Part shown: positions 37,361-58,479 of the stretch, piece after piece
How the letters are laid out: each line of letters begins with the position of its first letter
Numbering within the stretch: the first letter of the stretch is position 1
Source: Octopus sinensis
Taxonomy: Eukaryota
NCBI RefSeq assembly: GCF_006345805.1
Contig: NC_043012.1
Span: 25,544,001-25,608,000 of the forward strand
DNA: 64,000 nucleotides
Direction of reading: 5' to 3'
Made by a program: the position numbers and the translations under genes
The notes under the pieces: model-generated
The model's input: only the letters and a program-made list of their open reading frames with translations
Told to the model about the DNA's origin: nothing
Database searches by the model: none

Positions 37361-37418
<58 letters not shown>

Positions 37419-37444
37419 CATCATTATTATTATTATTATTATTA

Positions 37445-37481
<37 letters not shown>

Positions 37482-37550
37482 GCTATCATCCTCATCATCG
37501 TTATTATTATCTTTATTATTGTTATTATTGTTATTATTATTATTATTACT
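37340..37550. repeat. (TTA)n microsatellite
   Basis: Directly visible. Confidence 0.95.
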
Positions 37551-39156
37551 CTTATTTGCCTCTCATTGAAAGTTGTCTTAAACACAAGACTGAACAGCCA
37601 ATGCTGTAATGTATTAAAGAGCTTTTATCTCAAACTAATTCACTAAGCATGTCTTTCTAACGCTGAATTTTCTGCTTCCGCAATCTAAATGCGTTTCAAA
37701 TATTATTTCTTTTTCTTCCCAGCATTCATTCTTTCTTTCACTCTTTCTGCCTTTTTTTTTCTTAGTTTCTCCCCTTTCTCCTCCTTACTTTCTGTTTTTC
37801 TCTATCTTTCTTATCGTATCTTTTTGGTGGCTTTCTTTTTCTCTTTCCTCTCTTTGTTATTTTTATTCATTTCGTTTCATTTTCTTTTCATAAATTTCTC
37901 TTTGTTTGTGTGTTTAGTGGCTTGTTTCCTTTATGATTACATGTGTGTGTGTGTGTGAGTGTATGTGTGCACGCGTGTGTGTCTATATATGTGAGTATAT
38001 TAGTGTATGCGTGTATACATAAATACACACACATACACACAAACATATATATATAACATGCAATCATATCTATGTTCATTTGTTTTATAATTTTATAATT
38101 TCTTCTATATTTAGGAGGTTATCTTATTATTGTGCATATATATATGTGTGTTTATGTATATGTATATATATATATATATATAGATATATATATATATATA
38201 TATATATGTAGTATGTATGTATGTATGTATGTATGTGTATGTGTATGTATATGTGTGTACGTTATGAATATACATACTGACAGATACATACGTGTAAACG
38301 AATCTGCGTATCTTTGTACGTGAGTATATTTATCTCTCGCGCTCTCTCGTCCCTTCTCTGTGTCTTGTTGTGCGCATGTGTGATTGTATATGTGTATGTG
38401 TGTGTATGTCTGCATGCGTTTGTGTGTGTGCTTGTGTGTGTATGTTTGCGTGTTTGAGCGCGCGTATTATCCTCATTTCAAATACGAAATCCACATCTAA
38501 ACCCGACGCTTTAGTAACGAAGGCTCTTGTACGTTATCGGTCATTTCTACATATCCACGCATATTCACACTCTCACGTACAGTGTATATACATACGCACC
38601 AACATACATACACGCAAATACACTTTTTACATACTTAGAACTATACTTAGGCACAGACAAACATATGCAGCTTCATACATATATATGCAGATTCATACTT
38701 GCATATACTCATATAAACATACGCACAGACATACTCAGTTTTGCTTTACAAATATATCTCTCATTCTGCGCTCTGTCTTTCTTTCTTTCTCTCTTTCATT
38801 GTCTATCCCTCTCTACCTTCCGCTACTTGACTATGTGAAACTCTGCGGCGCTCTATCTCACCATAAGCGTCTAATCTAGATAATAATAATAATAATAATA
38901 ATAATGATGTTGATGATGATGATGTTGATAACAATAATAATGATAATAATAATAATAATATTAATAATAATTAAATGAAGAAGAAGCAGAAGGGGAGGAA
39001 GAAGAAGAAGTAGGGAGTAGAAGCAGAGGAGGAAGAAGAAGAAGAAGATAACAAACTAGGCAACTATTGTAACTAAACAGAAATATACATGCATACACGC
39101 ATATATAAGTATACATATATGCATGTTATGTATACACACACACATACACAAATACA

Positions 39157-39211
<55 letters not shown>

Positions 39212-39315
39212 TTATACATATATATGTGTATGTGTATTCTATATACATATATTTGTGTGCATACATACATAAACGCACACACACTCACACACACACCACA
39301 CACACACACACACAC

Positions 39316-39361
<46 letters not shown>

Positions 39362-39914
39362 GTATATATGCATAGGCACACACGAGTGCGTGTCTGTGAG
39401 GGTGTGTAATAAAAGGGGAATAAAACTAGAGGTAATCTTATGGAAGCTGCTTGTAAGATGGCATTAATGTGTCTTCCGATCGAGTTTGGTAGCGAAGTTA
39501 AAATTTCTGGTTGGTATCAGATGTTTTTGGCGAGGTAACTTGAGATACGACGTGGAGTAATGTGGTATTTTGTACTTTAGTGAGCGTAAGTTTGCGTGAC
39601 CTGGCGCTGGAGTATGGTGGGGCTGTATGGCCTCATTTGCTCTAGTGATGCAGTATGCAGCTGTATGGTGTAACCATGAACGGTGGTGTATCACGATGTG
39701 CTGCATTTACGCGGACTATAGGGTGATGTTTGGTGTAGTGAAATAAGTTCTTATGTGGTGCTTTAGAGCATGTGACGGCCCACATTGGTGCGGTGTATAA
39801 TGATATGGTGCAGTGTAATGCGGTTTTGTTTAGTCAAATGTAGTATGGGTTAGTGTGAAATACTGTAGAGTGGTATGCATTGTGGTATTGTTGTGGTCGG
39901 CCGTATTATAATGA

Positions 39915-40230
39915 AGTGTTTTCTTTGGTTAGAGCGTCGGGTTTGCAAACATGGGGTGGTAAGATCTATTCCTGGACTGGGCTGTGTGTTGTGTTCTTGA
40001 GCAAGATACTTTATTTCACATTGCTCCAGTTCACTCAGCTGTGACATCACTGATACTAATCTGTATCGGGTTTTGCCTTTCCCTTGGATAACGTCAGTGG
40101 CCCGGAGAGGTGAGGCTGATATACATAGGCAAATTCTGGTCTTCCACTAGAAGCACTGTCCGGACTTGCCCTTCGGAGGGGAGGTTTCTAGGTGCAATCC
40201 CATGGTCATTCATGACTGAAGCAGGTTTCC
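39915..40230 (+). mobile_element. SINE family D, diverged
   Basis: ggttagagcgtcgg...ttcctggactgggctgtgtgttgtgttcttgagcaagatacttt...ttgcctttcccttggataac is collinear with 15449-15790. Confidence 0.75.
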
Positions 40231-40618
40231 GTCCGTCACTATGTTGCTTGGGATGCAGTACGATGTGATGTCTTGTGTTATGGAGTGAAGGTGCGTAGCA
40301 TAGTAGTTAGGCTATCCTGTTCACGATTGCCAGGTTCTGCGTTTAGAATCTTGGCGGTGTGTTTTGTCCTTGCGCAAAACACTTTTTTTCACGTTAATCC
40401 TACTATGTGGCCCTCGGATAAGTGTTTACTAAATTGAACCGGTCCCCACTAAATACCTGGAAAGGAGATTCCTGTGATTGCTACTCTAAAAAGTCTAATG
40501 AAAACTGCTTGTGTTTTCGTACGGCAAACACCTCTGCAGATTTTTTTGTATATCCTATATACATATGTAGGTGCCTGTATGTTCATCATTTACATATAGG
40601 TGTCTGTATATATATATA

Positions 40619-41031
40619 GGCGCAGGAGTGGCTGTGTGGTAAGTAGCTTGCTTACCAACCACATGGATCCGGGTTCAGTCCCACTGCGTGGCATCTTGGG
40701 CAAGCGTCTTCTGCTATAGCCCTGGGCCGACCAATGCCTTGTGAGTGGAATTGGTAGATGGAAACTGAAAGAAGCCTGTTGTATATATGTATATATGTAT
40801 ATATGTGTGTGATTGGGGGGTTTGTGTGTCTGTGTTTGTCCCCTAGCATTGCTTGACAACCGATGCTGGTGTGTTTACGTTTCCGTCATTTAGCGGTTCG
40901 GCAAAAGAGACCGATAGAATAAGTACTGGGCTTACAAAGAATAAGTCCCGGGATCGATTTGCTCGACTGAAGGCGGTGCTCCAGCATGGCCGCAGTCAAA
41001 TGACTGAAACAAGTAAAAGAGTAAAAGAGTA
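40619..41031 (+). mobile_element. SINE family A, full-length young reference copy (tRNA head, CORE-like box, internal TA/TG microsatellite, second domain, (TAAAAGAG)n tail)
   Basis: ggcgcaggagtggctgtgtggtaag...gggttcagtccc...cttgggcaag...; multiple homologues in the window. Confidence 0.93.
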
Positions 41032-41184
41032 TATACGTTTATGAATTTGTGTTTCAAAATTCCTGATGTGAAGCCGTGTAATGAAACAGATAATGTTATA
41101 TTTGGAGATAATATGTATCTTTATTTTTTGGCCAAATTAACACAGACACACACACAGACACACACACACGCGCACTATATGTAT

Positions 41185-42030
41185 ATATGCCAAAGAAACA
41201 GCTACGGTGCACTGTAGGATAGGGCCACTCCTTGAAAAGGATGGCACACTCACAGGTAATCCAATGAAGGTAAGTGAAATACTAAATTAGCAATTCAAGA
41301 GTATTTTCACTCCACCCCTAGGGCATTGTCAAGTCAGCAATCCAACTGACTTTTTTTTACCACTGCAGATATAAAATCAGAGGCAGCGATGATTGATTAC
41401 ATCAATATAAAGGAAGACGATGTAATAAAGGCTATTGATGAAATGAAAACAAACTCAGCTACTGGCCCCGATGTATTCCCAGCAATCCGTCTAAAAGTAT
41501 GTAAGGGAGTCCTAGCAAGACCACTGCAGTTCCTCTTTCAGAGCTTCCTTGCAACTGGTAAACTCCCAAGAAAACTGAAGGAAGGTAAAATATGCCCTAT
41601 TCATAAAGGAGGTAGCAGAGCGGAGGCCAAGAACTACAGACCTATCTCTTTGACCTCACATATCAGCAAGCTCATGGAACGAATTGTCAGAAGGAAACTA
41701 ATCACCTTCCTTGAAGAAAATGACTTGCTGCCTGACACCCAACACGGTTTCCGACCAGGAAGAAGCTGCTTAACGCAGCTCCTACAACACTATGACTGGG
41801 TGCTGAAACGACTGCTCAACCACTCAAATGTGGAAGTTATATATCTCGACTTTGCAAAGGCCTTTGATAAAGTCGACCATGGAATGATATGTCACAAACT
41901 GCGTGATCTTGGCATAGTTGGAAAATTGGGAGAAGTCAGGTGGAACCACTACTGTTCATAATGGCCCTCTCAGACATGTCCTCATCCACGCAGAGAGCCA
42001 CGATACAAAAGCTGATACAAAAGTTTAACA
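41185..42030 (+). mobile_element. CR1-like LINE reverse transcriptase fragment, internally deleted
   Basis: ORF 41389-41961 contains ATGPD, PIHKGGSR..KNYRPISLTSHISKLMERIV, QHGFRPGRSCLTQLL and YLDFAKAFDKVDH. It then jumps to PLLFIMALSD and a damaged YADD region (ADTKV). Confidence 0.92.
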
Positions 42031-42059
42031 GGCCGAATTGATATGCATGCCTTTTGTGG

Positions 42060-42410
42060 ATTTTGGACTGTAATTACCCCAGGTATCGTCACAAAAAATA
42101 CCATTTGATGCACCAAGCAGAATGCACGAAACACAACTTGATTTATGTTGGTTGTACCACAGATCAATTAAACAAAAGATTCGATGGGTACAGATATGAC
42201 ATCAGGCACAATAAGAGTACTTCCACATAACTTGCCGATCATTTTGCATAAAACGGCTGCAATTTTGAAAAGGACTTGAAAGCGCATCTTCTCAGAAAAT
42301 ATTCTGAATCTGCTACACTTTCAGTACTAACAAGGGATGAAGAGAAATATGTTTGTGAGTTATTAACATCATACCCTTGAGGAATGAATTATATGACAGG
42401 AGAATAACAA
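42060..42410 (+). mobile_element. Penelope-like element GIY-YIG endonuclease fragment
   Basis: A frame with internal stops reads HQAECTKHNLIYVGCTTDQLNKRFDGYRYDIRHNK...LADHF.NGCNFEKDLKAHLL...ELLTSYP*GMN. This matches the PLE EN pattern CxxxxxxYVGxTxxxLxxRFxxHRxDI...L.T..P.G(L/M)N. Confidence 0.7.
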
Positions 42411-42691
42411 GCTGATTGATTAAATATTCTTCTTTATCTTTTGTTTTGTTTTCTTTCTTTTCTCTTTTTTAATTTTGCCTGTTGTAAACTTGAAAATTGA
42501 AGACTGATGATGTTATTCATTCAAAGTGGGGACGCTGGTTGCCCTCGTTCAGATTTTTATTTGAATTTATATAAGTTTAAAATTTTTAGGTATCACATTT
42601 TATTTTTAACTCAACAAAGACGGACTAGATGTCGAAATACCGTTCAACCAATAGAATATCTACAGCAATCGCATCGCTTTGTATTGTCTAA

Positions 42692-42734
<43 letters not shown>

Positions 42735-42766
42735 GTTGTTGTTGTTGTTATTATTATTATTATTAC

Positions 42767-42799
<33 letters not shown>

Positions 42800-43021
42800 C
42801 ATTATTATTATTATTATTATACAATGCTATATCGGCAGAGCTTGGTGCGATCCCATAAAACCGTTGCTGCAGGTTGGAATCGCTAGTCCGTAACCGACAT
42901 AATAAAAAATGAAGCTTTTATTCGCGTGGTCGAAAACGTTTCCCGTAAAGGAACTTATGGGATATGTTTGTGTTTCTGTATATGTATGTATGTGTGTGTA
43001 TAGATTTTCTTATGTTCTTCT

Positions 43022-43061
<40 letters not shown>

Positions 43062-44043
43062 CCAGCTTTTCTCTACTTCCTATCTTTTCCTTCTACTGAA
43101 GAGCGTATGAGGATAGTAACAAAAGAGACTTCCTGAGCACTAATATAATATACCCCGCCCTTTATTTTTACCTCGCTTCACCTTTTTTTCTAAAAATACT
43201 TCTGTACTATACCCACACCCACACCCACACACACATGCACACACGTCAGTACACGCAAACACGCACACGTATATACATGAATATATACATATATATTCAT
43301 ACACACATACATACATGTACATCCATATACGTAAATGTATATATTTTAGTACGCATGTATTTCCTCATATATCCGGTATACATTTCTTTACACATTCGGC
43401 ATTTCGATTTCGAACTGCTCACAAGAGTCTTTAGAGTTTTTTTCTGTCCTGAAACGTTTTCGCTATAATAACGTAGACGAGGACACAATACAGAACACCA
43501 GAGCACATCGGTGTCCTATAAATTCGATAGTACTGTGTGACGTAACAAAAGCGGTAACGATAAAGCTTAATGCCGGTGAGGAGCGTAGTACATTGTAGTA
43601 AATGTCTAATGATACTGGCTGTAATCCCTTTCAATAATTAACGACTAGTTCAAACTTTAGTTCCTGCATATTTTGCATGCAACAATGAAAGCGTACATGA
43701 TTACATGTCCAGGTACGCAGGTTGCAGGTGTCGAGTGTCATTGCAAATTAGTGCAACGGATATATCTATCACACACTTCGCCATTTTCTTCGCCGTTTAT
43801 AATTTCACAGATAACAATAAACAACCAATTGTGAGGCAAGTAATTGAACAAAGACACACATGCGCTCGCACGCGCACACGCGCTCCGAGAGATTCGCTCA
43901 CACTCTCAGGCATGCATCCATTAAACGTCCTCAGATAAACATACACGCAGAGCGTATACACATATTTATACGTATATGTGTGTATATATATATATTATAT
44001 ATATAAATGTGAATAAGTAAATAAACACACACCACATACACAG

Positions 44044-44080
<37 letters not shown>

Positions 44081-44145
44081 CATATATATACACATTTATA
44101 TATAAAGGGATTGGTAGATAGACAAACAAAATATAGAAACGTACA

Positions 44146-44177
<32 letters not shown>

Positions 44178-45509
44178 GCATATATATATACACGCACACA
44201 CCCGCAAACACACACAAACGCACGCGCGCACACACACAGACACACACACACACATATATATATACAAGCAAGAACGCTTACACGGATATATATATATATA
44301 TGTATGTATGTATATGTATATGTGTGGATGTGAGTGCGTGTGCTTGAGTGTGATTTTGTGCGTGTGTATGAATGCTTATGTTGGTATGTACGTCTGTATG
44401 CACTCATGTCCCACAGCACAAACTAAATACTAACCGTGTCAAACGCAGAGATGAACACAAACACGTATTCACATAAACACACATGTCCACTTACACCACA
44501 CATATAAGTCAATACAACATATAATCACGCAAACAGGGAAAACAAAACACGCCAATTTTCTCTCTGTCTGTTTGTGTATCTTACTTCCTAACAGATATAC
44601 AAGCGTGCGCATTTACAAACCCATATAATAAATATATTCATATAAAGACAAAATACACTATCTCTATACCTCAAATATGTACATATTCACACACATTCGC
44701 ACACAAAACGCACTCTCAAACTCACGAAAACATGCACACAGGGGCACAGAAGAAGAAAGCCACACTCTTATTGTCGTCCACATCCACATACGCAAAAGGA
44801 CTGCGCGCAGATTTAGGCATATGCCCTTGCAGATAACAAGAAATCTGACATTGTGTAAGTTGTAAATCCTGCCATAAAAATTCGACTTGCTATTTTTCAA
44901 TGATGTAAAATGGAGGGCTGTGAAGATTAATGCAGCCTAAGATTGACATTAATAGCTTACCATTCCATGTTTGTGATAGGAAACACATGTCAATGGTAGT
45001 GAGGAATTTCTGCAGCGTGTAGAGACTGTTCCGTTCGAAGGTAGAGGTAAACTGCTCCAGTGATTGTATTTTGAATAATCTTAGCTGTTTCCATGGTTGT
45101 ACACTATCGGACCAAGGACCGAGTTCCTCTCCCACTCCCTAGTCGGTTTAGTTTCCTGCCAACATCTGCGCTAATAGACTATACTCAAGAGGATTCGCGT
45201 TTCAGTTTTTACTATTTCATCTCAAAAAAATGAAATGAAGAATTTGATAATGTAGTTTGAGCACAATGCAAATTGGAATTCAAAGGGTTTGTCACGTTTG
45301 GAATGCTTTTTACCATGGAATACTACATCCAACTAGCTTTTATTAATCGCTTTCAGTTCTTACATCGTTACAAGAAGGCATAATTATCCTCTCGACCCCT
45401 TACGAATGATCTAGTTTGACGGAACATCCTGGATGTGGCAGTTGGGGTAACAAACGCATGAACCTGCACTTCCCAGGGTTTCAGAACAGTTTCCAAAATG
45501 TAGCAATAT

Positions 45510-45617
45510 CGAATGAAGTGCTTTGCTCGAGGACACAACGCCCTATCCGATCTTGGAATGGAACACACTACCTTATGAACTTAGATAAACACCCTAACTA
45601 CAAAAGCAAGTGCCTTT
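45510..45617 (-). mobile_element. SINE family D head, degenerate
   Basis: aagtgctttgctcgaggacacaacgc...ggaatggaac...accctaactac is the reverse complement of the family D 5' region. Confidence 0.55.
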
Positions 45618-48379
45618 ACTATTTATCATAGACCTGACTGCTCATGCGTGACCTAAGTCTGATATAGAAAATTAACAACGATAATTAATTTGAAAACAGA
45701 TCTTGATATGTGTCTACTGTTTCATGTTTTGTCAATTCTAAGGCCATATGAAGAACCTATCATATCTTGCCTTTATGTGGTACCACAATATTTGCATGAA
45801 ACCAAAGCTTTATAGAGAAAAAATGCATTTTGTTAAGCTGCAGATATCGAAAATACTACCTATGCAGAACAGTGTTTCATAAGGTAGCTCCTGGAAAACA
45901 AATTACAGTGAAAAATCTAGTGGAAGATAAATTATGTAAAAGCAAAACCAAAAATAAAAATAAAAGAAAGCAATATAACCTATTTTACAGATTGGTATTC
46001 ATAGAATTGTATTTATCGAAATAATAACTGACATGATATGAAATTAAGTACCATTAAAATAATAAACGAGCTGAATGGGGGGGGGGCGCCATTGCCATTG
46101 CTATCATCTGTAGAAAGGCAAAATTAGTTTGGTGCAAGCGTTCAGACAGGTAACTTAAAGAGTTGCCTGTCGAATGAACGCATCTGCTTGCCGCACTGCT
46201 TTCCCGTGTTCTCTGAATAACCTTGCTGGTTTAGCTTTATTCGTTGTGTCACAATTTAAGTCTATAAATTACGTAAAACTGGTTTAAATACATGTAGATA
46301 AATTATTCCTCAATATCAAAGTCGATATGTTAGGATTTCTGCACAACACTGTATATGTGATTACAATGTTCAAAGTATGGGTCATTAAAAAAATAAAAAG
46401 ACAGTAGAAATATTAGTTTTTTTAAAGTAAATACTGAGCGCACATCTATAGAAAGGATGGAGATTATAGAATTATTTTTACAAGAATCAGCTTTTAGTTC
46501 GGTTCACTTACGCAAAGAAAGAAAAAAACTTTTGTGCAGTTGTGTATGAAAGAAAGCTAAATAATCTACTAATTATTCATTGTTTGGGTTCTTCTTTAAA
46601 TGTTGGTAACGAAGAAGCTCCAGATGTTGTTTGTTTACTTCGTAATATTCCTATCAGTAAACTGTTCTTTGACACCAGAAATATTTCGAAGATTCGCGGA
46701 AGCAAATCATCCGACTTATAAAGATAAAACAATTTCTTTTGTTTTAAGGGAAACTTGAAAGACGCATTAATTCTGTAAGATTCATATTTAAACAACTTCA
46801 AACCAGATAAAGAGAAAGCGACAGAAGCGGTGAATATAGCATGTTGCGGCAGGCATTGCATTGTTCTCTCTTCTAAAGGATTTGAGGAATGACTTGTAAA
46901 ATATTGCGTAAAATTTATCGTCGTGTGTGTGTTTGCTGCAGATTCTGTTTAAAAGAATAACAGAAATCTGGGTCTCATTCCATGACTACTATATCTTCTC
47001 TATCTCTCTGTGTTGACAATATTTCAGATGACTTTAAAGCAGATGTTATTTCAATATTAAATGTACCTGCTGCTGATGTATTATTACTACACGAAACTAC
47101 AGTATGGCAATATTATTTCGTTATATTTTATATTTTTTAAAGAAAAACAAAAAATGAAGTTTCTCTTTAATGTGAATATTTCGAAATGCAAAATGCGGGA
47201 AATAATTTTATAAAAACTCACTTTATGATTTAGAGTTATACGTATCGTAACAGTGACAAAAGCGCAAATATATTGCGAAGAAAAGTAGCTGGTAGTATGA
47301 AAGGAATAAAGAATGTTCGAAAAACAGGAATAGTTATCAATGCATCCAGTTGCTTTAAAATCCATTTTAGCTGAAGTCGTAATGGTCATCAGTTATATTT
47401 CATCCCGACAATTGTATTCGTGTATTATATTTTTCAAATCCTATTTTGAAGATGTGGGTGATTTTCGCAGCATTTCCTAGAATTTAGATCGCAATCTCGA
47501 AATAATATTCGTGTGTGAATGTTTGCATTACGTAAAGAAGCGTTGGCATATTTTATCGATCTTCAATTTTGATTATCCATCAGGTTTACAAATGTACCGT
47601 GGCTATAAAGAATCGCATGTTTTGCTGAGACTTTGGGGAATCTAAAGCATTACGTTTATCATTGAAAACGGAAAGAAGTGAATATTTTTGAAGCCGAATT
47701 AAATTTGAAACATTGCAGCTAGGGAACTTAGTGTTTTTGGATTATTTCTGGTTTTCGCGATAAAGCCGAATGTAATTTTTGCAGCGCATTATAATCACTA
47801 TCCGAGTGTCCTACGAAATTTGAAGAACGAAACTAATTGTTAAGCACAAAAATAAAGAAGAAAATAAAGAAGACAAACACCAATTTAATTTCTCACGGTG
47901 GATTTTGGAAATTCAATAGGAATTAGTTCACAAAATTAAGTAAATACTAAGTTTGAAGGTATTTTCTTTGCAAATTTCGATACAGCGATATATTTCAAGA
48001 TTATTCACAATTACCTAAATTGGATATTAGAGTTATTCTCTATTGGAAACAATGAATTTCTATGAATACGTCATTTCTGAGGACATAAAAAAAGACTAAC
48101 TATTGCAAAAGAACGATGGGTAAACTAGATATGTGATTTCGTTTAACAGTATTAAATCCAATTTTCCGAAAATGTTAGTTTCGAAGAATAATTTATTTTT
48201 CGCATAAACCACTTAATATTTTAATATATTTTTGCGCCAAAGTTTAAAAAAAGCTTATAACTGCTAGAAACGGAGATGTGTTCTTGTATATTTTTCAATT
48301 TAGATAATATATGTGTGCATGTGTGTGTGTACACGTGTGTGTGTTCGTGGGTGCGTCTAAGTAAAGTCTAATTGCTTAC

Positions 48380-48458
48380 CTGGTGTACCAGGGGCACCAA
48401 CTTTTAGAGGTTCACAATAATCTTTGGTAGTTCGACAGAATTTATTGAGTGTGTTAAC
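48380..48458 (-). CDS. Internal coding exon (79 bp, phase 0 to 1) of a gliomedin/colmedin-like transmembrane collagen: C-x6-C motif plus start of collagen helix
   Basis: Minus strand reads ...ccttttttctttctttcttgcag|GTTAAC...GGTACACCAG|gtaagc, with a long polypyrimidine acceptor and a strong donor. Translation is VNTLNKFCRTTKDYCEPLKVGAPGTP(G). CRTTKDYC followed by Gly-X-Y matches the CNSTKGIC-LTGPSGPP segment I recall from vertebrate gliomedin (family assignment from memory, not a search). Confidence 0.82.
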
Positions 48459-48519
48459 CTGCAAGAAAGAAAGAAAAAAGGATGACATAAGTAAAAAAAA
48501 TAACACCTCCTTCGCCACC

Positions 48520-49142
48520 ACTACCACCACCACTACAACCAACACCACCACCAACAACAACAACGCCCTCAACATGACCTCAACGATGACGATGACCACC
48601 AGCCCCGACACCACCATCATCATCATGAGGAAGGAGACGACGAGAAAGAGAGTCACCATCACCACCACCACCATCATGACATCGACGGCAACGAATACCC
48701 CCCATCATATTCACTACCCTCACCGCGACCACCACGATTATCACCACCATCTCCACGACGATGACAAACCACCACCACCACCACCACCAAGACGGTGAGC
48801 TGACAAGATGATTTGCACACCAGACAAAATACGTAGCAGCATTACGTTGTAAGTTCAAATCCTTCCATGGCCGTCTATGCCTTTCGTCGAGATCGAGAAA
48901 ATAAGTAACATGAATCGACTTACCCCCCACCCTTGCACCGAAATTTCAAAATTATTATTGTTGTTGTTGTTATGGCCTTCACCATCATAATCATCTTCAT
49001 CCTCATCATCGTCATCATCACCAAACCACCACCACCACCACCACCACCACCACCATTCATCATCACCATCATCATCATCATCATCATCATCATCATAATC
49101 ATCATCGTCATCATCATCATCATCACCACCATCATCATCATC

Positions 49143-49174
<32 letters not shown>

Positions 49175-49195
49175 CACCAAACCACCACCACCACC

Positions 49196-49241
<46 letters not shown>

Positions 49242-49290
49242 CCACCACCACCACCACCACCAACACCAACATCATCATCGTCCTCCTCAT
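48520..49290. repeat. Compound (CAC)n/(CAT)n/(CAA)n trinucleotide array with internal higher-order duplication
   Basis: Directly visible; starts about 60 nt upstream (gene orientation) of the 48458 acceptor. Confidence 0.92.
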
Positions 49291-49724
49291 TATCATTATT
49301 AGTACATCTTCTGCAGAGACTCGGAATGTGTCTAACAAATCAAGCAATTATCGTTGATTGGTACTTATTGATATAGAAACGAGAGGGCGACGACGGTAAG
49401 GATTATGTCACTGGCGTAGATGGGAGTAATATGGTAAGTGCTTTTGGTAATTATGAATCTAATGACTAGTAATGACTAGTAATGACATGACAGTGGTTAC
49501 ACTGATGATCATGATGTCGTTGTTGCCATTGTTCTTGTGGTGCCATCGGTGAGGATGAGAACGTTGTTCGCAGTTAGAAACCTGGATTAAATATACGTTG
49601 TAATGAGAAAACGATGGACTGAGAAGATCCACAACCATTGGTTCACTGATTTATCTGCAATATGTGAATCCCGGATCAGTAAGTAGAATCCAGTGTTGGA
49701 TTGAGACGGTCATTTTATGTATTT

Positions 49725-49732
49725 ATTTATTA

Positions 49733-49793
<61 letters not shown>

Positions 49794-49854
49794 TATTATT
49801 ATTTATTATTATTATTTATTATTTATTATTATTATATTATTATTATTATTATTA

Positions 49855-49900
<46 letters not shown>

Positions 49901-50120
49901 TATTGTAAACTGCTCCTAATGCTCCATTTACCACCAGTATCGCTATTACATTCCCCCTCATTCTTCTTCTTCTTCTTCTTCTTCTTTTCTTCTTCTTCTT
50001 CTTCTTCTTCTTCTTCTGTCGACTTTACTTTCTCCTTTATCGCATACCTTGTTGTCAGCCTGGCTATATCTATATATCTATGCTATATCTATGATCCTGC
50101 ACCGATTGCCTTCTTTCTAA

Positions 50121-50180
<60 letters not shown>
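49725..50180. repeat. (TTA)n and (TTC)n microsatellites
   Basis: Directly visible. Confidence 0.93.
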
Positions 50181-50181
<1 letters not shown>

Positions 50182-50504
50182 GAGTGAGAGAGCAGCACAA
50201 GCCATCAAAGTGACACTGAGGTAAAATATACAAAGCCCCGTATACCCATCATGACTACCCGTCTGATGAAGGTGCACTAGGCACATGCATCACAACCATG
50301 GTGATCTCATATCAAGATAAACGGCACATGACCTTGCAGGTGGGGCCCAGTTAGAATTTTCTTCTGGTCGAGTAACGCATCCTGCTCAAAAGGTCTCTGA
50401 ATAAGGATTGTTTAAGGATGTTGAACGAAACACCTAGGTTTCCAGTGGTGAATTATTCAAACCTCCAACGAATCCCTCTCAACACATGGCTATAATGCTC
50501 CCCC

Positions 50505-50561
<57 letters not shown>

Positions 50562-50688
50562 TGTTGTTGTTGTTGTTGTTGTTGTTGCTATTATTTTTTG
50601 TGTGTGTGTATTTGTCAAAATATTGAGGAATGATATAAGTGACGTCGGTAACATTCGATCTCTGAATGAAAGTTAATATATAAGGAAG

Positions 50689-50751
50689 CCTAGTACTTAT
50701 TCTATCGGTCTCTTTTGCCGAACCGCTAAGTTACGGGAACGTAAACACACT
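50689..50751 (-). mobile_element. SINE family A internal fragment
   Basis: agtacttattctatcggtctcttttgccgaaccgctaagt matches 18159-18198 almost exactly. Confidence 0.8.
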
Positions 50752-51014
50752 TTATATATATAACACGTCAGATTGTGATACTCTTAAATTAGTTTCTATT
50801 AGTCATTATACTTGACCGCAGAGATAATTGCTAAGTTCTGTTGTTCTTTTAGATGTTTAGCTGTACATCAATTCTTTTCTAGCCAACATATGACAAAATC
50901 AGATTTATTCCAGTTGTGAACAGTATATCGCTTACAAAAATTTCTTTCTTAAGACAAAAATTTCTCTACTGTCTTAAGATATGATTTTTGAAGAAATATT
51001 TTTATGGCTGAGAA

Positions 51015-51210
51015 AAGCGGCGTCCTGGCAGAATTGTTAGCACGGCCGGCAAAATGCTTAGCAGTGTTTTGCTCGTCTTCGCGTTTTGCGTTCGAATTCC
51101 GCTGAGGTCGACGTTGCTTCTCATCCATTCGAAGTCAGTAAGATAAGTATCAGTCGATGTGATCTACTTAAGCTCTTTTCCGAAATTGCTGACCTTCTGC
51201 TAAAATTTGA
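51015..51210 (+). mobile_element. SINE family B
   Basis: gcggcgtcctggcagaattgttagcacggccggcaaaatgcttagc...gttcgaattccgctgaggtcgac. Confidence 0.8.
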
Positions 51211-52089
51211 AATCGATATTTCACGACTAAGTTCAGAATCATACATGGTGTCTACTTCTAACAGTAACCGAGTACATATACATTACAGATTGATATTGAA
51301 GCATTATTAATCCTAATAATATTTTTTACTGTAAGGGGTATTGATAGCGCATCAAAGAAAATGTCTTGCTGTATTAATTTCCGTTCAGAGATCGAATGTT
51401 GCCAACGTCAATTTTATCATTCTTCCATACCGGGACAAACACACAACACACACACACACACGGAGAAAATAATAATAATGATAATAAAATAACATTAACA
51501 TTAAATGCAGGCATGGATATTAATCAACAATAACCCGTGTGCCAAAGTGAAAAAGCAAATTTATTTAAAATATAATTGACATGAAATTCATTAAGAATTA
51601 ATTTATAATTCAATCATTTATTCAATTTTAGAAACCAAAGGAAACAAAAGTGTCCTGCGGTGCGAAGTAAAGACCATGCCTTTAAAACAGAATATTAGGT
51701 GATATTCTCAAAAGTTAACAATCACCGCACCTTAACAAACTTTCGTGACATACACACAGAGCTTTGGAATTTCAAAGAAAAAGCAAGAAATGCTAATCAG
51801 CGTGACATCTTCGACTGAAGATCACACAGAATTAGGGTTGGTACAATAAAAAGAAGTCAGTTTTACTCAGTGACATTGTTTTTGTATTAATATTTCTTTA
51901 GTTTTAATTTTTATTTTTCACATTCATTTAATCTTTCTTTTGATCTTTCTTCACTATTTCATTCAATTCACTTATTCAGGCTTCTTCTACTGTTCGTTAT
52001 TATTAAATCTCACTGTTACTTCTCTCTTTTATCTCTCTCTCTTACAGAGATACTGAATACACACATGTATACATACATACATACATACA

Positions 52090-52123
<34 letters not shown>

Positions 52124-52951
52124 CATACATGCATATTATATATATATATGCCTATATATATGTGTGTGTATATAAATATATAAATACATATACATATACA
52201 CTTATACATACACAGACATATATGCATATACATACATATATCTACATATGGTAAAGGTGAAAATTATAAATAATAAAGTTGGTTATTCGCAATTTTACAA
52301 CCGAAAGGCAGAAATATAGACGTCACTAAAGTCATTAAGGTCACTAGTCAGTACCAATATTGCTAGAAATGAAAGCCAAAATATCTCATCTCACTTATCT
52401 TAATGACAAGGGAGGCAAGGTCCCTACAGGTTCGGGCTTAGTCAGATCACCAGTGATTTTGCATTTTTATCAATGTTCACCAGTGGCTCTGGTATCTGGG
52501 GTTACACTCAACCTCGCCTTGTGAGTTTATAAGACTACCAGAGAAATCACACACTGATTTCCTAAATGGTATACTTATTCATGCAGGTGTGTATGAGTGT
52601 AAAAAGTTTCGTAACGAAACAAAGAGACAGATATGTCTATATTTAATAGCGGCAGATATTGAAGGATATCCCATTAATTTTTTTGTTTTTGATGGGCATT
52701 GCTTATTAGACGAATTGACTTCTTTTGGGGGAAATGAATGCTTTTGAAGACGAATATTCTACAGACTTTTAACACAAAACAGAAAATGTATTGAAGAACC
52801 GTCTATAGCCATGGATTCATTAAAACACTGTAATATATATAAATATATATATATATGTATGTATGTATGTGTGTATGTATATGTATATGTATATATATGT
52901 ATATATAAATATGTATGTATATGTATATATATATATATATAATTAATCAAA

Positions 52952-53051
52952 NNNNNNNNNNNNNNNNNNNNNNNNNNNNNNNNNNNNNNNNNNNNNNNNN
53001 NNNNNNNNNNNNNNNNNNNNNNNNNNNNNNNNNNNNNNNNNNNNNNNNNNN
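52952..53051. other. Scaffold gap (100 N, true size unknown)
   Basis: Run of exactly 100 Ns. Confidence 0.99.
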
Positions 53052-53929
53052 ATGGCATGTGCTGAAAAATTCCTGCCTTTAAGGCTATCGCGAAAGGCCT
53101 GGTTGGTGTTCCATCCTTCCGAGTCCTTTCATAGGTTAAAGAAAAAAAAAGTCAAGGAGTGCTGCAATAAGTGTGTAAACCTGAGACAGGAATATGTTGA
53201 ATGAAATCATAATTAATTGATCCTCCTGTATTTTCTGTTGCCCAAAGTCAGAAACTTTCAGCAAACCCTTATTATGTGAAATGAGAATATGAGGTATTCA
53301 TGCATCTTCTATGGGTTTTAACTACGCACTGACATATGAAGGAAGACTGTATGATTTCCTAATCTTCTTGAATGCAATAAAAGCTACAGTGAAAGAAGAA
53401 ATTGTATTGATCATGACTACTAAGCGAAACCCGTGCCGTCACATTCTACTTCACAGGCATAAAACCACTTATCTATATAATACGATATAATATTGAGCTT
53501 GATATCAAGGAAAATAACAAGAACATTACTATCACTATCAGCTATAAAGCTGACAGTAGCATAACCTCCACTACTACGCTCGACAGCAACAACAGCAGCA
53601 GCAGCAGTGGCAGCCGTAGCAGCAGCAGCAGCAGCAGCAGCAGGAATAACAGCAATATGATAAAAATGACAAAAAAAAACTAGTAATAAGTGTAGCAGAA
53701 AAAAAAATACAGAACGAAATATATGGAGCCATAGATATAAAGGAGCAATGAAAGGGGAGATGGAAGGGGGAGGGGGAGGAGGGGAAAAGAAGAAAAAGAA
53801 ACAGGACTTAACAATGAGCATAACGACGGCGATGACGACGAAAAACGACGACGACCACCACCACCACCACGGCGGCGACGGCGATGGTGGTGGTGGTGTG
53901 ATAGTGATAAAGAAGGAAGAGGAAGTGAA

Positions 53930-54150
53930 GAAGAAGAAATATAAGAAGTAGTAGTAGTAGTAGAAGAAGAAGAAGAAGAAGAAGAAGAAGAAGAAGAAGA
54001 AGAAGAAGAAGAAGAAGAAGAAGAAGAAGAAGGAGGGAGAGGAAGAAGAAGAAGAAGAAGAAAGGAGGAGAGGAAGAAGAAGAAAGGAGGAGAGGAAGAA
54101 GAAGAAAGGAGGAGAGTAAGAAGAAGGAGAAGAAAAAGAAGACGAAGACA
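53930..54150. repeat. (GAA)n polypurine tract with a ~22-bp secondary repeat
   Basis: Directly visible; aaaggaggagaggaagaagaag-type units recur at about 54030-54120. Confidence 0.93.
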
Positions 54151-54309
54151 GTTTGGAATATTAAATTATTGCTTCAGTAGTTCGGTTCGGCTAATGTTAT
54201 ACCATGTTGAATAGTTGACTCCGGAAATACCTTTTTTACATGATAATTCCGATAGTGAAAGCTGTTGATCATGTTCTTTCTTATTGATGATGTTGTTGTT
54301 GACGTACCA

Positions 54310-54314
54310 ATTAC

Positions 54315-54363
<49 letters not shown>

Positions 54364-54427
54364 ATATTATTTTTATTATAATTATTATTATTATTATTAT
54401 TATTACTGTTATTATTATTATTATTAC

Positions 54428-54458
<31 letters not shown>

Positions 54459-54508
54459 TTTGTTTGTTGTTATTGTTGTTATTTTTGTTATTGCTGCCAT
54501 CATCATCA

Positions 54509-54560
<52 letters not shown>

Positions 54561-54635
54561 TACTACTATTATTATTATTATTATTATTATTTTTGTTTGC
54601 TGTTATTGTTGTTATTGTTGTTATTGCTGCCATCA

Positions 54636-54691
<56 letters not shown>

Positions 54692-54725
54692 GTTGTTGTT
54701 GTTGTTATTATTATTATTATTCTAA
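54310..54725. repeat. (TTA)n/(TTG)n/(CAT)n array with ~135-bp internal duplication
   Basis: tttttgtttg.tgttattgttgttatt.ttgttattgctgccatcatcat occurs at about 54457 and 54590. Confidence 0.9.
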
Positions 54726-55940
54726 TATCAGCGCTCGTATCTGCGAGATAAAGAAGTAAAAATTCTCCGTTGAAATCCTGTCAAACATATGAAAAGAGTA
54801 TTTGTCACAATTAAAAAGCTACCCGTTTTCTCAAAGAGTGATGCGCTTCCTGGAATTCTAAACAAGCAAAAAAGTTTTTTATAAACGCCAAAAACAGAAA
54901 ACAAAAATGACAGAAAAACGAAGGAGGGAGGGAGAGAGATTCGGGTATGGTGAGTGATAGACGTGGTTTTAAATAAAGAATAAAAAAAAAAATATATATA
55001 TATATTTCAAAGTGAAATTAAACGTATTTAATATAGAGAAGTAGAAACAGACGTAGTAAAAAAAAAAAAAAGGAAACGTACAAAAGCTGACGATGAGGAG
55101 GGGGGAGATGGGGATGTGGGGAGGGGGAGGAAAAGGAGAAGGAGTAGGAGGAATGATGCTATTGTGGTGAATGATGATAGCGAGGAGGTTTATCATGATG
55201 AGAGTGAATCTAATGATGATTATGGTGATGATGATGATGATGATGATGATGATGGTGATGATGACGACTTTACTGTTTAACCCGAGGTCAATTATTGCTC
55301 GAGAGGCATTTCATCGAAGTGTGCACTGCCTTTGGTAATAAGTGTATTGTTAGTTATGAAACGTAACTGAATAATTAAGGCTATATAATTAATAAATTAA
55401 CATGAAGGCAATCACGTGCACGGACACACACATACACACACACACACACACAGGCACGCACCCATAGGCACACAAACACACAGGGAGGTCTGTGTCGGTA
55501 TGTATGATTTCACGGTATGTATTACAAAACGTCACCGTACGGCAAATATTAGCACCAACACCTCAAGTTGAGGCTTTCTACGTGCTTATTTGACTTGCTA
55601 GAAATAGTTAAGCAGCCCTTGAAGAATGTTTTACTATTTTATATGATATCATAAAATATTTTGTTACACGGCATTAAACATGGTGATTGTCTTGAAGAGA
55701 ACGTTGGTTTTTAACAGGGCTAAATGTTGATCTTGAGGAAGCCGCCTTAACCGGGGGCTGACTTGGAGCGAAACAGCAGCAGTAAGAATCAACATAATCT
55801 ACTATACTGTATACAACGTACCCCCAGCTCACACCATCACCATAGGCACTACCAGTAACACCTCAACCACCAGCACCGCTATCACACCATCGCTGTTAGC
55901 ATAATAAATAATAAAAACAAGAGCAACAATATATATTACT

Positions 55941-56142
55941 TTTTCTCTTCTACCCTGGGCACAAGGCCCAACACTTTTGAGTAGAAGTTCAAATTTTTGA
56001 GGAGGGGTACTTAATTCATCTAGCCCCAAAGGATTAAAGGCAAATTCGACCTCGGCGGAATTTGAACTCAGAACGTAAAGACAGACGAAATAGCACTAAG
56101 TATTTCGCCTGGCGGGCTAACATTTCTGCCAGCTCGTCGCTT
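55941..56142 (-). mobile_element. SINE family B
   Basis: ggcacaaggccc...aaaggcaaattcgacctcggcggaatttgaactcagaacgtaaag...ttctgccagctcg matches 765-976. Confidence 0.88.
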
Positions 56143-57315
56143 ACAAATAGAGATTACCTGCAACAACACTGACACATTCCCAACCACGAGCAACATCGAC
56201 GGAACCCAACCACCAACACCACCAAGGGGGATAGCCGGAAGTGTAAGGACGTTGCGGCGGATGTATCATGATACGTGTTCCAAGTTTTTTGATGTTAGTT
56301 CAAATCCTGCCATGGGTCTACTTAGGAACATCACCACAGTTTGAGAAATGAGAGATGGTCCTATAACCGATTCGTTTCGGGTGTTAATATTCGGGTCAAG
56401 TCTGTCTTGTGCGGATATATTCCTATCAGTCTATGGACCCCTGTAAAGGGCCATGGTTGCTGCATTGCTTCTTCAGAAGGGAAAATTTCGAGGGGAATAA
56501 AAGAACCCTCACCATTTACAAAAGGGGAGGCAAAAGCACTAATACAACCATGAAGCATTCTAACACTATTGGTCCATCGAACATGGCGACGACCATCAGC
56601 AACGCTACTATCTCAAGACGCAACACTAGACGCAACATCCAGGGGCACCACTAAAACAACAGCCTCTACAAATACCACCGAAATCAGCAGCACCGCCACC
56701 ACCAACAACAAGAGTTACAAAATAAACACCAACCAGAATATGTACACCAACGACCTAACCACCAACACCACCACCAGTAATACAAGCATAGAAGCACTTC
56801 TATTACCACGCCATTGACTCACAAAGCAACAAACAAGTGCTACAGATTTCATTTCATTCAGACATCAAAATATTACAGAACATGAGGAAGATTACGAAGA
56901 GAGATAAAATTTCTTTTAGTCTTTGTCTTGAAGAAACTCATTGGTTCTTAGAAATTTGGAAGTTTTCCGTTCCATAGTTTTGGTTACGTTTAAAATATTC
57001 CTCCTGTGTGAAGGAAATATATATTTATATTATTAGAGTCAAAAATATTAAGCGGATAAAAATGGTAAAAACCATGATGAGTCCTATAGAAAGAATATTA
57101 TTAATATCACATATACACATAGCTTAAATACACACGTCTGTATAAAAGCCGCCCATGCATAAGCAGGTAGAGTAAAGGAATGCGTATATATATATATATA
57201 TATGTATATCTGTATGTATATCTGTATGTATATATATATATGTGTATATATATGTATGCGTGTGCATATATATATATGTATGCGTGTGCATATATATATG
57301 TGTATGCGTGTGCGT

Positions 57316-57355
<40 letters not shown>

Positions 57356-57357
<2 letters not shown>

Positions 57358-57660
57358 TTTTTCTTTTACTTGTTTCAGTCTTTTAACTGAGGGCATGCTG
57401 GAGCACCACCTTTTAGTCGAACAAATCGACCCCAGGACTTATTCTTTGTAAGCCTACTACTTATTCTATCGGCCTCTTTTTGCCGAACCGCTAAGTTAAG
57501 GGGATGTAAACACACCAACGGCGGTTGTTAATCGATGGTGAGGGGACAAATACAGACACACAAATACTCACACACGCACACATATATATGTATATATACA
57601 ACGGGCTTCTTTTTATTTTCCATCTACCAAATCCACTCAGGTTTTGGTCGGCCCGAGTTA
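57356..57660 (-). mobile_element. SINE family A, head-truncated
   Basis: cttttacttgtttcagtc...gccgaaccgctaag...ccaaatccactca...ggtcggcccgag. Confidence 0.88.
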
Positions 57661-58479
57661 TCTCGCTCCATCTGCCTATCTTTCTATTTACTTGATATTT
57701 TCCTCGTGTTTATTACAAACTTATATATATATATATATATATAATATATATATATTTATATATATATAATATCATACATGGATATGTGTTTCTACATTCG
57801 TATGTACACTATATCCGCAAAATACATACACTCGGATAAGGCCACAGCGTTTCATAGATTATCATGTATTTCACAAATGTATAGTCGAGGGCGCCTTATG
57901 TACACATACATGCGTACATATAATTGTAAATACGTGCTATATGTATATACAGATTTTTGCATGTTTGTCTGTCTCTTTTTTATCTCTTCCTTTCTCTCTA
58001 TCTATCCCTCTTTCTCTCTTTTGTCTCTCTTTATCTCCTATCTATCAGCAGAGTTTACATTCAGTTTTAAAAAAATTATATATTCATATATGCAAATGTG
58101 TTGTAGTGATTTGTTAGACTGTTCGTATGAGGTTTTTGAAATACATGTCACTAAACTAATTTGCATATGAAAAAACATCAGAAATCATTCTTCAATCTGT
58201 GAGACTGTAAGAGTTTTAGTTCGCGAACACGCAAACTATAGAACTGCAGAAATTATAACGAAATTGACAGACTTATATGCATCTAAATTCTAAAAGTGTC
58301 CGATTTAAAATCCCACCGGTGGTCACATTATTTGAATTTGTTTTTCTTCTTTTCCCCAGGGTCGATTAATTAACAACCTCCTTTTATTTTCTTAAAATAT
58401 TTTTAATACGATTTTGTCCAAAACAAGCTTTGACACCATTGTGAACTAAAATACTCCAAATGTATGTACAAATATAAAG

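What the first reader, a model, noticed from the sequence alone, without database searches (positions are those of the whole stretch)
48380..48458. Hidden exon of a gliomedin/colmedin-like transmembrane collagen
Seen: a 79-bp exon with canonical splice sites, buried at the end of a poly-Val/Met low-complexity ORF. It encodes C-RTTKDY-C immediately before Gly-X-Y repeats and splices in frame across a 20.7-kb intron (48379 to 27704) to give 11 consecutive triplets (GAP GTP GQP GRP GRQ GAK GDK GDL GQR GQP GLT). Knowledge: gliomedin and invertebrate colmedins (C. elegans UNC-122, COF-2) are type II membrane proteins with a collagen stalk and an olfactomedin domain. I recall human gliomedin as CNSTKGIC before its helix, the same C-x6-C spacing with TK conserved. 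Vertebrate gliomedin clusters Na channels at nodes of Ranvier, whereas cephalopods are unmyelinated. Inference: this is a cephalopod colmedin whose TM exon lies beyond 64000 (or in the gap) and whose olfactomedin exons lie before position 1. Its function in a myelin-free nervous system is open.
Basis: partly seen in the sequence, partly recalled or inferred. Interest (0 to 1): 0.75.

Follow-up and report, generated by a model that had tools for sequence, protein, structure and literature searches.

The report
Octopus colmedin-type membrane collagen exons
The 79-base exon is real and belongs to an already annotated but misnamed octopus gene for a membrane-anchored collagen of the gliomedin/colmedin lineage, although the olfactomedin head that defines that family could not be found anywhere in this genome.

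Summary
Minus-strand exons 48458-48380 and 27703-27623 have canonical splice sites. Read in the frame they share across the 20,676-nt intron, they give C-x6-C followed by 11 Gly-X-Y triplets.

Both exons are already used in RefSeq XP_036366088.1 (Octopus sinensis, uninformative name), so the exon is not hidden.

The predicted transmembrane exon exists. It lies 183 kb upstream, outside the window, and adds a furin-type RRKR site and the first half of a conserved pre-collagen box.

That box (W-V-W-L-T-S-Y-S-R-I-P, 7 residues, C-x6-C, G-X-Y) is shared with about 60 proteins that carry collagen plus an olfactomedin (OLF) domain. They come from priapulids, annelids, nemerteans, arthropods, amphioxus and vertebrates; vertebrate gliomedin has CNSTKG[IV]C. 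The lineage assignment is therefore well supported.

The next collagen exon (13 more triplets, 24 in all) sits on unplaced contig C8610. This explains why the RefSeq model runs into an intron.

No OLF sequence was found in 200 kb downstream or anywhere in the assembly with four different queries. Full colmedin membership is unproven, and loss of OLF is a live possibility.

No RNA reads could be obtained.

The parts
48380..48458 (-). Exon A (coding exon 2 of XP_036366088.1), 79 nt, phase 0 to 1. It encodes the second half of the colmedin pre-collagen box (7 residues, then C-x6-C), a 5-residue linker and the first two Gly-X-Y triplets.
   Evidence: sequence, splice sites, translation. (match to P0001 and P0002). 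(colmedin signature HMM ranks this ORF second of 11,312, E 4.6e-3). (single copy).
48414..48437 (-). Codons of the C-x6-C pair (CRTTKDYC), placed 5 residues before the first Gly of the helix. Inferred to be an interchain disulfide knot or chain-registration element.
   Evidence: C-x6-C stands directly before the first Gly-X-Y in 64 other retrieved proteins, 62 of them OLF-bearing. The function is inferred, not tested.
27704..48379 (-). Intron between exons A and B, 20,676 nt, GT...AG.
27623..27703 (-). Exon B, 81 nt, phase 1 to 1. It encodes nine Gly-X-Y triplets and the first base of the next Gly.
   Evidence: Pfam Collagen 22.2 bits on the exon alone. 100% match to P0001.
48459..64000 (-). 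The 3' part of intron 1 (whole intron 183,481 nt; it runs on beyond the window to exon 1 at C16:25775940-25776557). It holds a 100-N assembly gap at 52952-53051 and trinucleotide-repeat DNA at about 48500-49400 that creates the poly-Val/Met/Gly/Asp reading frames next to exon A.
27558..27622 (-). Intron sequence that RefSeq XP_036366088.1 translates by reading through the exon B donor. This is a model artefact caused by the missing downstream exon.
   Evidence: P0001 residues 233-281 map colinearly to 27704-27558. (the O. bimaculoides model continues with collagen instead).
25221..25298 (-). The piece that supplies the last residues of the truncated RefSeq model. Probably not part of the true protein.
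   Evidence: P0001 residues 270-298 map here at 72% identity. It has no counterpart in P0003.

Best explanation
Exons A and B are genuine coding exons of a single-copy Octopus sinensis gene that is already annotated under an uninformative name (XP_036366088.1). The gene encodes a type II membrane protein of the colmedin/gliomedin lineage.

Shown here:
- Exon 1 lies 183 kb upstream. It gives a 15-residue cytoplasmic tail, one signal-anchor helix (residues 16-34), an Asn/Asp-rich spacer, an R-R-K-R furin-type site (177-180) and the first half of a conserved box (D-Y-V-W-L-T-S-Y-S-R-I-P).
- Exon A supplies the second half of that box (7 residues, then C-x6-C) and starts the triple helix.
- Exon B and a further exon on unplaced contig C8610 extend the helix to 24 uninterrupted triplets, about 20 nm.

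Inferred:
- The protein inserts with its N terminus in the cytoplasm.
- The membrane-proximal non-collagenous region, including the conserved box, brings three chains into register. The cysteine pair locks them by disulfides at the N-terminal end of the helix.
- A furin-like protease can shed the rod, as shown for gliomedin.

Unresolved: what the rod carries at its far end. In all other proteins with this full box it is an olfactomedin propeller. In this genome none can be found. I lean slightly (about 55:45) to the head being lost or replaced rather than merely unassembled.
For: - Splice sites, phases and translation.
- Exact public protein containing exon 1, exon A and exon B in order.
- Exon 1 donor CCA|GTAAGT in phase 0, matching exon A's phase.
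- Hydrophobic segment 16-34 (Kyte-Doolittle 2.71), RRKR, C-x6-C and Gly-X-Y positions.
- Priapulus gliomedin-like protein (Collagen + OLF) aligns through the box and the TM region.
- C-x6-C directly before the helix is found in 64 other retrieved proteins, and 62 of them carry PF02191.
- An HMM built from 59 non-cephalopod signature segments ranks the exon 1 ORF first (E 1.5e-4) and the exon A ORF second (E 4.6e-3) among 11,312 ORFs.
- With collagen masked, the octopus protein hits only colmedins, in the TM box (Lineus E 3e-6, Owenia 5e-4) and in the signature.
- Exon C with matching phase lies on C8610.
- In gliomedin, the furin site RNKR lies between TM and collagen and is needed for shedding, and the N-terminal non-collagenous region is needed for self-association: PMC2064815.
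Against: - No RNA evidence could be obtained, so use of the junctions rests on two RefSeq models, phase logic and cross-species conservation.
- No OLF-coding sequence was found with the Pfam HMM, a priapulid OLF fragment, a tick colmedin or a Mytilus colmedin, nor with a local OLF HMM on 264 kb.
- The 3' end of the gene is unresolved in this assembly.
- The O. bimaculoides model ends 30 residues after the helix.
- Flanking charges on the two sides of the TM helix are similar, so the type II orientation rests on homology and on the needs of the collagen, cysteine and furin parts.
Confidence: 0.85

Rival explanations
1. It is a complete, canonical colmedin. OLF exons exist but lie in unassembled, withheld or unplaced sequence (for example further along C8610), or are too divergent or too finely split for the genome search.
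For: All non-cephalopod proteins retrieved with the full box carry OLF. The gene is demonstrably broken across contigs, with a gap in C16 at 25528352-25528451. The six-frame search uses a pre-filter and had no positive control for OLF.
Against: Four different OLF-containing queries gave no credible OLF hit in 2.7 Gb. The same pipeline does detect partial C1q and TNF exons at 20-32 bits. The only OLF-like ORF, on C2127, belongs to a dispersed repeat and ends in poly-A. Neither octopus RefSeq model nor any cephalopod protein of 189-1045 aa in the protein collection shows OLF joined to this N terminus.
Confidence: 0.35
2. It is a headless derivative of a colmedin. Octopods kept the anchor, shedding site, box and collagen rod but lost the OLF domain. 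The protein then ends in a short tail, as in XP_052829403.1, comparable to SCARA3, which ends at its collagen domain.
For: The O. bimaculoides model stops 30 residues after the 24th triplet. No OLF was found in the genome. Bivalves have type II collagen proteins that lack OLF (P0164, P0175).
Against: The 3' ends of both octopus models may be artefacts, and the O. sinensis one certainly is. The 30-residue tail could not be searched because no reference exists for it. An absence finding from a pre-filtered search is weak.
Confidence: 0.45
3. The rod carries a different head, such as Ig modules as in arthropod colmedins, an LCCL-like module as in the bivalve proteins, or a TNF, C1q, lectin or SRCR domain.
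For: Arthropod colmedins have Ig domains between collagen and OLF. Bivalve P0164 and P0175 have Ig plus a Cys-rich LCCL-like C-terminal end. Exon C ends in phase 1, so at least one more coding exon follows.
Against: No Ig, OLF or other colmedin-like exon lies in 264 kb of C16 or in the 3 kb around exon C. C1q, TNF and LCCL hits lie elsewhere in the genome. SRCR and C-type lectin were not searched.
Confidence: 0.12
4. It is a MACIT-type (XIII/XXIII/XXV, COL-99) or type IV-like collagen, not a colmedin relative.
For: It shares the type II anchor, furin site and collagen. Some database names of its relatives read 'collagen alpha-1(XXIII)-like'.
Against: Only 24 uninterrupted triplets were found. 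The proteins named XXIII-like that share the full box carry OLF. With collagen masked, only colmedins match.
Confidence: 0.03

Closest known systems
Vertebrate gliomedin (GLDN)
   Same: Type II anchor. Furin-type site between TM and collagen (RNKR in GLDN, RRKR here). Pre-collagen box with Y-S-x-(I/V)-P, 7 residues, then C-x-(S/T)-T-K-x-x-C directly before the helix.
   Different: Gliomedin has interrupted, longer collagen repeats and a C-terminal OLF propeller that binds neurofascin and NrCAM. Here there are 24 uninterrupted triplets and no OLF was found. The octopus spacer is Asn/Asp-rich.
Invertebrate colmedins (C. elegans UNC-122 and COF-2, Drosophila CG6867; retrieved here from priapulid, annelid, nemertean and arthropod species)
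   Same: The closest sequence matches. The TM box H-I-(R/K)-(V/I)-L-Y and the signature W-V-W-L-T-S-Y-S-R-I-P ... F-C-x6-C-x-P-G are near-identical in tick, hemipteran and chironomid proteins.
   Different: All of these carry OLF, and arthropod ones also carry Ig domains. UNC-122 and COF-2 themselves were not retrieved or compared here.
Molluscan gliomedin-like proteins (Mytilus, Solemya, Dreissena, Bulinus)
   Same: Collagen plus C-x6-C before the helix, in the same phylum.
   Different: They have OLF but lack the W-V-W-L-T-S-Y-S-R-I-P half of the box. The octopus protein has the box but no detectable OLF.
Bivalve type II collagen-Ig proteins (P0164 Pecten, P0175 Crassostrea)
   Same: Type II anchor, dibasic site, C-x6-C before the collagen, and no OLF.
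   Different: They have a much longer collagen, an Ig domain and a Cys-rich LCCL-like end. They lack the S-Y-S-R-I-P half of the box, and no match to them was found at the octopus locus.
SCARA3 and other class A scavenger receptors; ectodysplasin A
   Same: Collagenous type II membrane proteins, some shed by furin. SCARA3 ends at its collagen domain (PMC4491621, PMC7848082).
   Different: No sequence similarity outside the collagen was seen. TNF hits lie elsewhere in the genome.

Membership tests
Colmedin family (gliomedin, UNC-122, COF-2) | Type II membrane topology: short N-terminal cytoplasmic tail and a single signal-anchor helix | tested here: met
   Residues 16-34 form the only strongly hydrophobic window (KD 2.71). 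This region aligns to the TM box of Lineus, Owenia and Priapulus colmedins. Orientation is inferred from homology.
Colmedin family (gliomedin, UNC-122, COF-2) | Extracellular collagen (Gly-X-Y) repeats | tested here: met
   11 triplets in exons A and B plus 13 in exon C on C8610. Pfam Collagen 52.8 bits on P0003.
Colmedin family (gliomedin, UNC-122, COF-2) | C-terminal olfactomedin (PF02191) domain | tested here: inconclusive
   Not found in 200 kb downstream, around exon C, or genome-wide with four queries. However, the gene's 3' end is unassembled and the search is pre-filtered. Because of this the gene is filed as colmedin-lineage, not as a proven full member.
Colmedin family (gliomedin, UNC-122, COF-2) | Empirical pre-collagen signature derived here: (W/Y)-V-W-L-x-S-Y-S-R-I-P, 7 residues, C-x6-C, then the helix | tested here: met
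   The direct exon 1 to exon A junction gives the canonical 7-residue spacing.
Colmedin family (gliomedin, UNC-122, COF-2) | Furin-type shedding site between TM and collagen | tested here: met
   R-R-K-R at 177-180 fits R-X-K/R-R, and gliomedin has RNKR at 91-94. Only the motif was tested; cleavage itself cannot be tested with these tools.
MACIT collagens (XIII, XXIII, XXV, COL-99) | Several long collagen domains interrupted by non-collagenous segments | tested here: not met
   One uninterrupted run of 24 triplets. No further Gly-X-Y exon in 264 kb of C16. The O. bimaculoides model leaves the helix after triplet 24.
C1q/TNF-type collagen-stalk proteins (C1q-like, ectodysplasin) | C-terminal C1q or TNF jelly-roll domain | tested here: not met
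   C1q and TNF hits in the genome lie on other contigs. No sequence similarity outside the collagen.

The most novel reading that the evidence does not exclude
Octopods retain the membrane anchor, furin site, chain-registration box and collagen rod of a colmedin but have lost the olfactomedin propeller. The genome may hold no OLF domain at all. The conserved N-terminal module would then act on its own, as a shed 20-nm collagen rod or with a new short tail. This would show that the box encoded half by this exon is an autonomous functional unit.
Probability: 0.4. Interest if true: 0.55.

Novelty: new member of a known kind. Interest (0 to 1): 0.35.

Why it matters
- It gives a meaningful identity to octopus genes now labelled 'putative protein DDB_G0292252' and 'serine/threonine-protein kinase samkA-like'.
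- It corrects a truncated RefSeq model and points to an assembly break: exon C is on unplaced contig C8610.
- It defines a short pre-collagen signature, conserved from priapulids to vertebrates, that marks the colmedin lineage and probably nucleates trimer formation.
- If the olfactomedin head is truly missing in octopods, this would be a natural experiment on what the anchor-plus-rod part of gliomedin-type proteins does alone.
- Otherwise it is an ordinary orthologue, useful for studies of synapse and glia-axon matrix in cephalopods.

Tried and rejected
Searches that led nowhere:
- The word search with the 115-aa ORF around exon A found nothing, because of its length limits.
- Pfam on exon A alone gave nothing.
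- C1q, TNF and LCCL heads: hits lie only elsewhere in the genome.
- OLF: there were two weak genome hits. The C14 hit falls to noise with a colmedin-type OLF HMM. The C2127 hit has more than 20 scattered partial copies with stops and ends in a poly-A run, so it is a repeat fragment.
- No phase-1 exon continuing Gly-X-Y lies downstream on C16.
- The 7-residue micro-exon of the O. bimaculoides model was not found in 48459-64000 or downstream. It is an insertion relative to every other family member.
- Earlier scan notes added nothing for this locus.

Steps I could not do:
As a result the upstream flank and the rest of C8610 were seen only through search loci.
- The spliced model was searched exon by exon by reference, and the joined step was left out. 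Public proteins P0001 and P0003 were used instead.
- The 30-residue C-terminal tail of XP_052829403.1 has no DNA reference and was left out of all searches.

Full report
**1.

On the minus strand, 48458-48380 is a 79-nt exon. A long pyrimidine tract and cag precede it, and gtaagc follows it. C-x6-C lies at 48437-48414 and the first Gly codon at 48398.

The same frame stays open upstream through trinucleotide-repeat DNA. This produces the Val/Met-rich 115-aa ORF 48360-48704, so the description 'buried in a low-complexity ORF' is accurate.

Exon B is 27703-27623: 81 nt, aag|G acceptor and CAG|gtaaga donor. Exon A ends after the first base of a Gly codon and exon B supplies the other two. Read in that shared frame, the two exons give 11 Gly-X-Y triplets plus the first base of a twelfth. 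The intron is 20,676 nt.

- No other run of four or more triplets lies on this strand in the window or in the 200 kb downstream that I fetched.
- The exon A peptide is single-copy in the 2.72-Gb genome.

**2. The exon is not hidden**

The window is C16:25544001-25608000 of the assembly. A search with a 30-residue reference covering exon A returned two proteins.

- P0001 is RefSeq XP_036366088.1 of Octopus sinensis, on a contig of exactly the length of C16.
- P0002 is a 59-aa ORF call from another species. It keeps the exon peptide at 86% identity and diverges exactly at both splice sites.
- The cluster mates of P0001 are XP_052829403.1 of O. bimaculoides (P0003, 343 aa) and a 223-aa UniProt fragment.

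Their names ('DDB_G0292252', 'samkA') come from an Asn/Asp-rich low-complexity stretch and say nothing about function.

I searched the spliced model exon by exon, by reference. The joined step was left out, and the public proteins served in its place.

**3. Gene structure**

- Exon 1 maps to C16:25775940-25776557 (minus), which is window-equivalent 231940-232557. Its donor is CCA|GTAAGT in phase 0. Intron 1 is therefore 183,481 nt and contains the 100-N gap at 52952-53051.
- Exon 1 encodes 206 residues:
  - a 15-residue tail;
  - the only strongly hydrophobic segment, residues 16-34 (Kyte-Doolittle 2.71);
  - a basic juxtamembrane stretch;
  - a spacer that is 60% Asn/Asp;
  - R-R-K-R at 177-180;
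  - R-G-D at 188-190;
  - D-Y-V-W-L-T-S-Y-S-R-I-P at its very end.
- After exon B, the O. sinensis model reads through the donor into the intron (27622-27558) and then adds a piece from about 25298-25221. This is an artefact.
- The O. bimaculoides model continues with collagen instead. The matching exon in O. sinensis is on unplaced contig C8610 at 58197-58313 (minus). It is 117 nt, has an aag|GA acceptor and an AAAG|gtacgt donor, runs phase 1 to 1, and encodes 13 triplets.
- The helix is thus 24 uninterrupted triplets, 72 residues, about 20 nm.
- C16 has a 100-N gap at 25528352-25528451, 43 kb downstream of exon B. C8610 may belong there. This is not shown.

**4. What family it belongs to**

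The first whole-protein word search gave mostly collagen-only matches. One exception was a Priapulus 'gliomedin-like' protein with Collagen and OLF domains, which also aligns outside the helix.

A profile search with that pair then returned colmedin/gliomedin proteins from many groups: nemerteans, annelids, arthropods, a horsehair worm, a bryozoan, echinoderms, amphioxus, bivalves, a gastropod and vertebrates.

- In 64 other retrieved proteins a C-x6-C stands directly before the first Gly-X-Y. Of these, 62 carry PF02191.
- In the non-molluscan members the cysteines are preceded, at a fixed 7-residue distance, by (W/Y)-V-W-L-x-S-Y-S-R-I-P.
- Vertebrate gliomedins read M-T-Y-S-M-V-P ...
- The octopus junction of exon 1 to exon A falls between the two halves of the box and gives the canonical spacing. 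The 7-residue micro-exon in the O. bimaculoides model is an insertion relative to every other member. I did not find it in the window.

Two controls support the assignment.

- An HMM built from 59 distinct non-cephalopod signature segments was run against all 11,312 six-frame ORFs of the 264 kb plus the exon 1 and exon C loci. It ranks the exon 1 ORF first (20.6 bits, E 1.5e-4) and the exon A ORF second (15.9 bits, E 4.6e-3). The next ORF has E 0.24.
- With all collagen masked, the octopus protein matches only colmedins, both in the signature and in the TM box H-I-R-V-L-Y (Lineus E 3e-6, Owenia E 5e-4).

**5. How it probably works**

The following is known for gliomedin:

- It is a type II protein.
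- It trimerises through its collagen domain.
- It is released by furin at RNKR between the TM helix and the collagen.
- Deleting the juxtamembrane coiled coil reduces self-association, and deleting the whole N-terminal non-collagenous region almost abolishes it (PMC2064815).

By homology I infer the following for the octopus protein:

- The N terminus is in the cytoplasm.
- Chain recognition happens through the N-terminal region that holds the conserved box.
- The cysteine pair encoded by exon A forms a disulfide lock at the start of the helix.
- The helix zips away from the membrane.
- Cleavage after RRKR is optional and would free a rod that begins about 20 residues before the box.

None of these steps was tested here.

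**6. The missing head**

The family is defined by an OLF domain (PMC1215479, PMC7848082). I could not find one.

- The Pfam HMM over the whole genome gave at best 17.8 bits.
- An OLF-only priapulid fragment gave nothing.
- A tick colmedin and a Mytilus colmedin matched only through their collagen, or collagen and Ig, parts.
- tblastn and a local OLF HMM built from 76 domains found nothing in 264 kb of C16 or around exon C.
- One OLF-like ORF on contig C2127 scores 17-19 bits. It has more than 20 scattered partial copies with stops and ends in a poly-A run, so it is a repeat fragment.
- The same pipeline finds partial C1q and TNF exons at 20-32 bits, so it is not blind to single exons.

The search is still pre-filtered, it had no positive control for OLF, and the gene's 3' end is not assembled. 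The O. bimaculoides model ends 30 residues after the helix. That tail has no reference, so I left it out of all searches.

I therefore treat OLF as inconclusive. I file the gene as colmedin-lineage by its N-terminal hallmarks, and I lean slightly towards loss or replacement of the head.

**7. Limits**

- All 'own' genome searches, all word searches and the one large search were used.
- No contig looked human.

**8. Verdict**

Two points do not stand. The exon is not hidden, because it is already annotated. The olfactomedin exons are not where predicted.

Absence of myelin raises no paradox, since nematode and insect colmedins are known. This is a new, re-identified member of a known kind. Its open and moderately interesting question is whether octopods have a headless colmedin.

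Noticed in passing
L026 1512-1628 (= G000:C8610:58197-58313, minus): The next coding exon of this chromosome-16 gene (13 Gly-X-Y triplets, phase 1 to 1) lies on an unplaced contig. The assembly is broken inside the gene, which is why the RefSeq model is truncated. A 100-N gap at C16:25528352-25528451 is a candidate insertion point.
   Followed up: partly
window 48500-49400, both strands: Dense trinucleotide-repeat DNA (GGT, ATG and GAT types) gives long poly-Val/Met, poly-Gly/Asp and poly-Trp reading frames right next to exon A. It is intronic and not coding.
   Followed up: partly
G000:C13:54495500-54512000 (plus): A tandem array of about 20 short collagen-like ORFs spaced roughly 1 kb apart, many with in-frame stops. 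It appeared in every collagen-containing genome search. It could be a collagen-like gene cluster or a satellite with Gly-X-Y coding potential.
   Followed up: no
P0003 residues 214-220 (O. bimaculoides XP_052829403.1): A 7-residue micro-exon splits the conserved pre-collagen box. It is an insertion relative to all other family members, is absent from the O. sinensis model, and was not found in window 48459-64000. It may be an alternative micro-exon or a model error.
   Followed up: partly
P0164 (Pecten) and P0175 (Crassostrea), C-terminal 110 residues: These bivalve proteins, named 'collagen XXIII/XI-like', are type II membrane proteins. They have a dibasic site, C-x6-C, long collagen, one Ig domain and a Cys-rich end that looks LCCL-like by eye. 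Pfam reported no LCCL hit at E 0.001.
   Followed up: partly
P0001 residues 188-190 (exon 1, C16:25775940-25776557): An R-G-D tripeptide lies between the furin-type site and the conserved box. It is identical in O. sinensis, O. bimaculoides and the O. vulgaris fragment P0017. It could be an integrin-binding motif or chance.
   Followed up: no
L036 1486-1671 (= G000:C2127, minus): A 62-aa ORF whose only Pfam match is OLF (19 bits). It ends in an 18-A run and has more than 20 degenerate copies across chromosomes. It is a repeat-derived look-alike that could mislead OLF searches in this genome.
   Followed up: yes
P0017 (Octopus vulgaris hypothetical protein, 252 aa): A chimeric gene model. Only residues 115-170 match the end of exon 1 of this gene, and the rest is unrelated. 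The O. vulgaris orthologue is therefore also mis-annotated.
   Followed up: partly
G000:C4:16356290-16356862 (plus): A single open frame of 205 aa holding both collagen triplets and a full C1q domain (58.7 bits). It is an ordinary C1q-like gene, unrelated to the finding.
   Followed up: no
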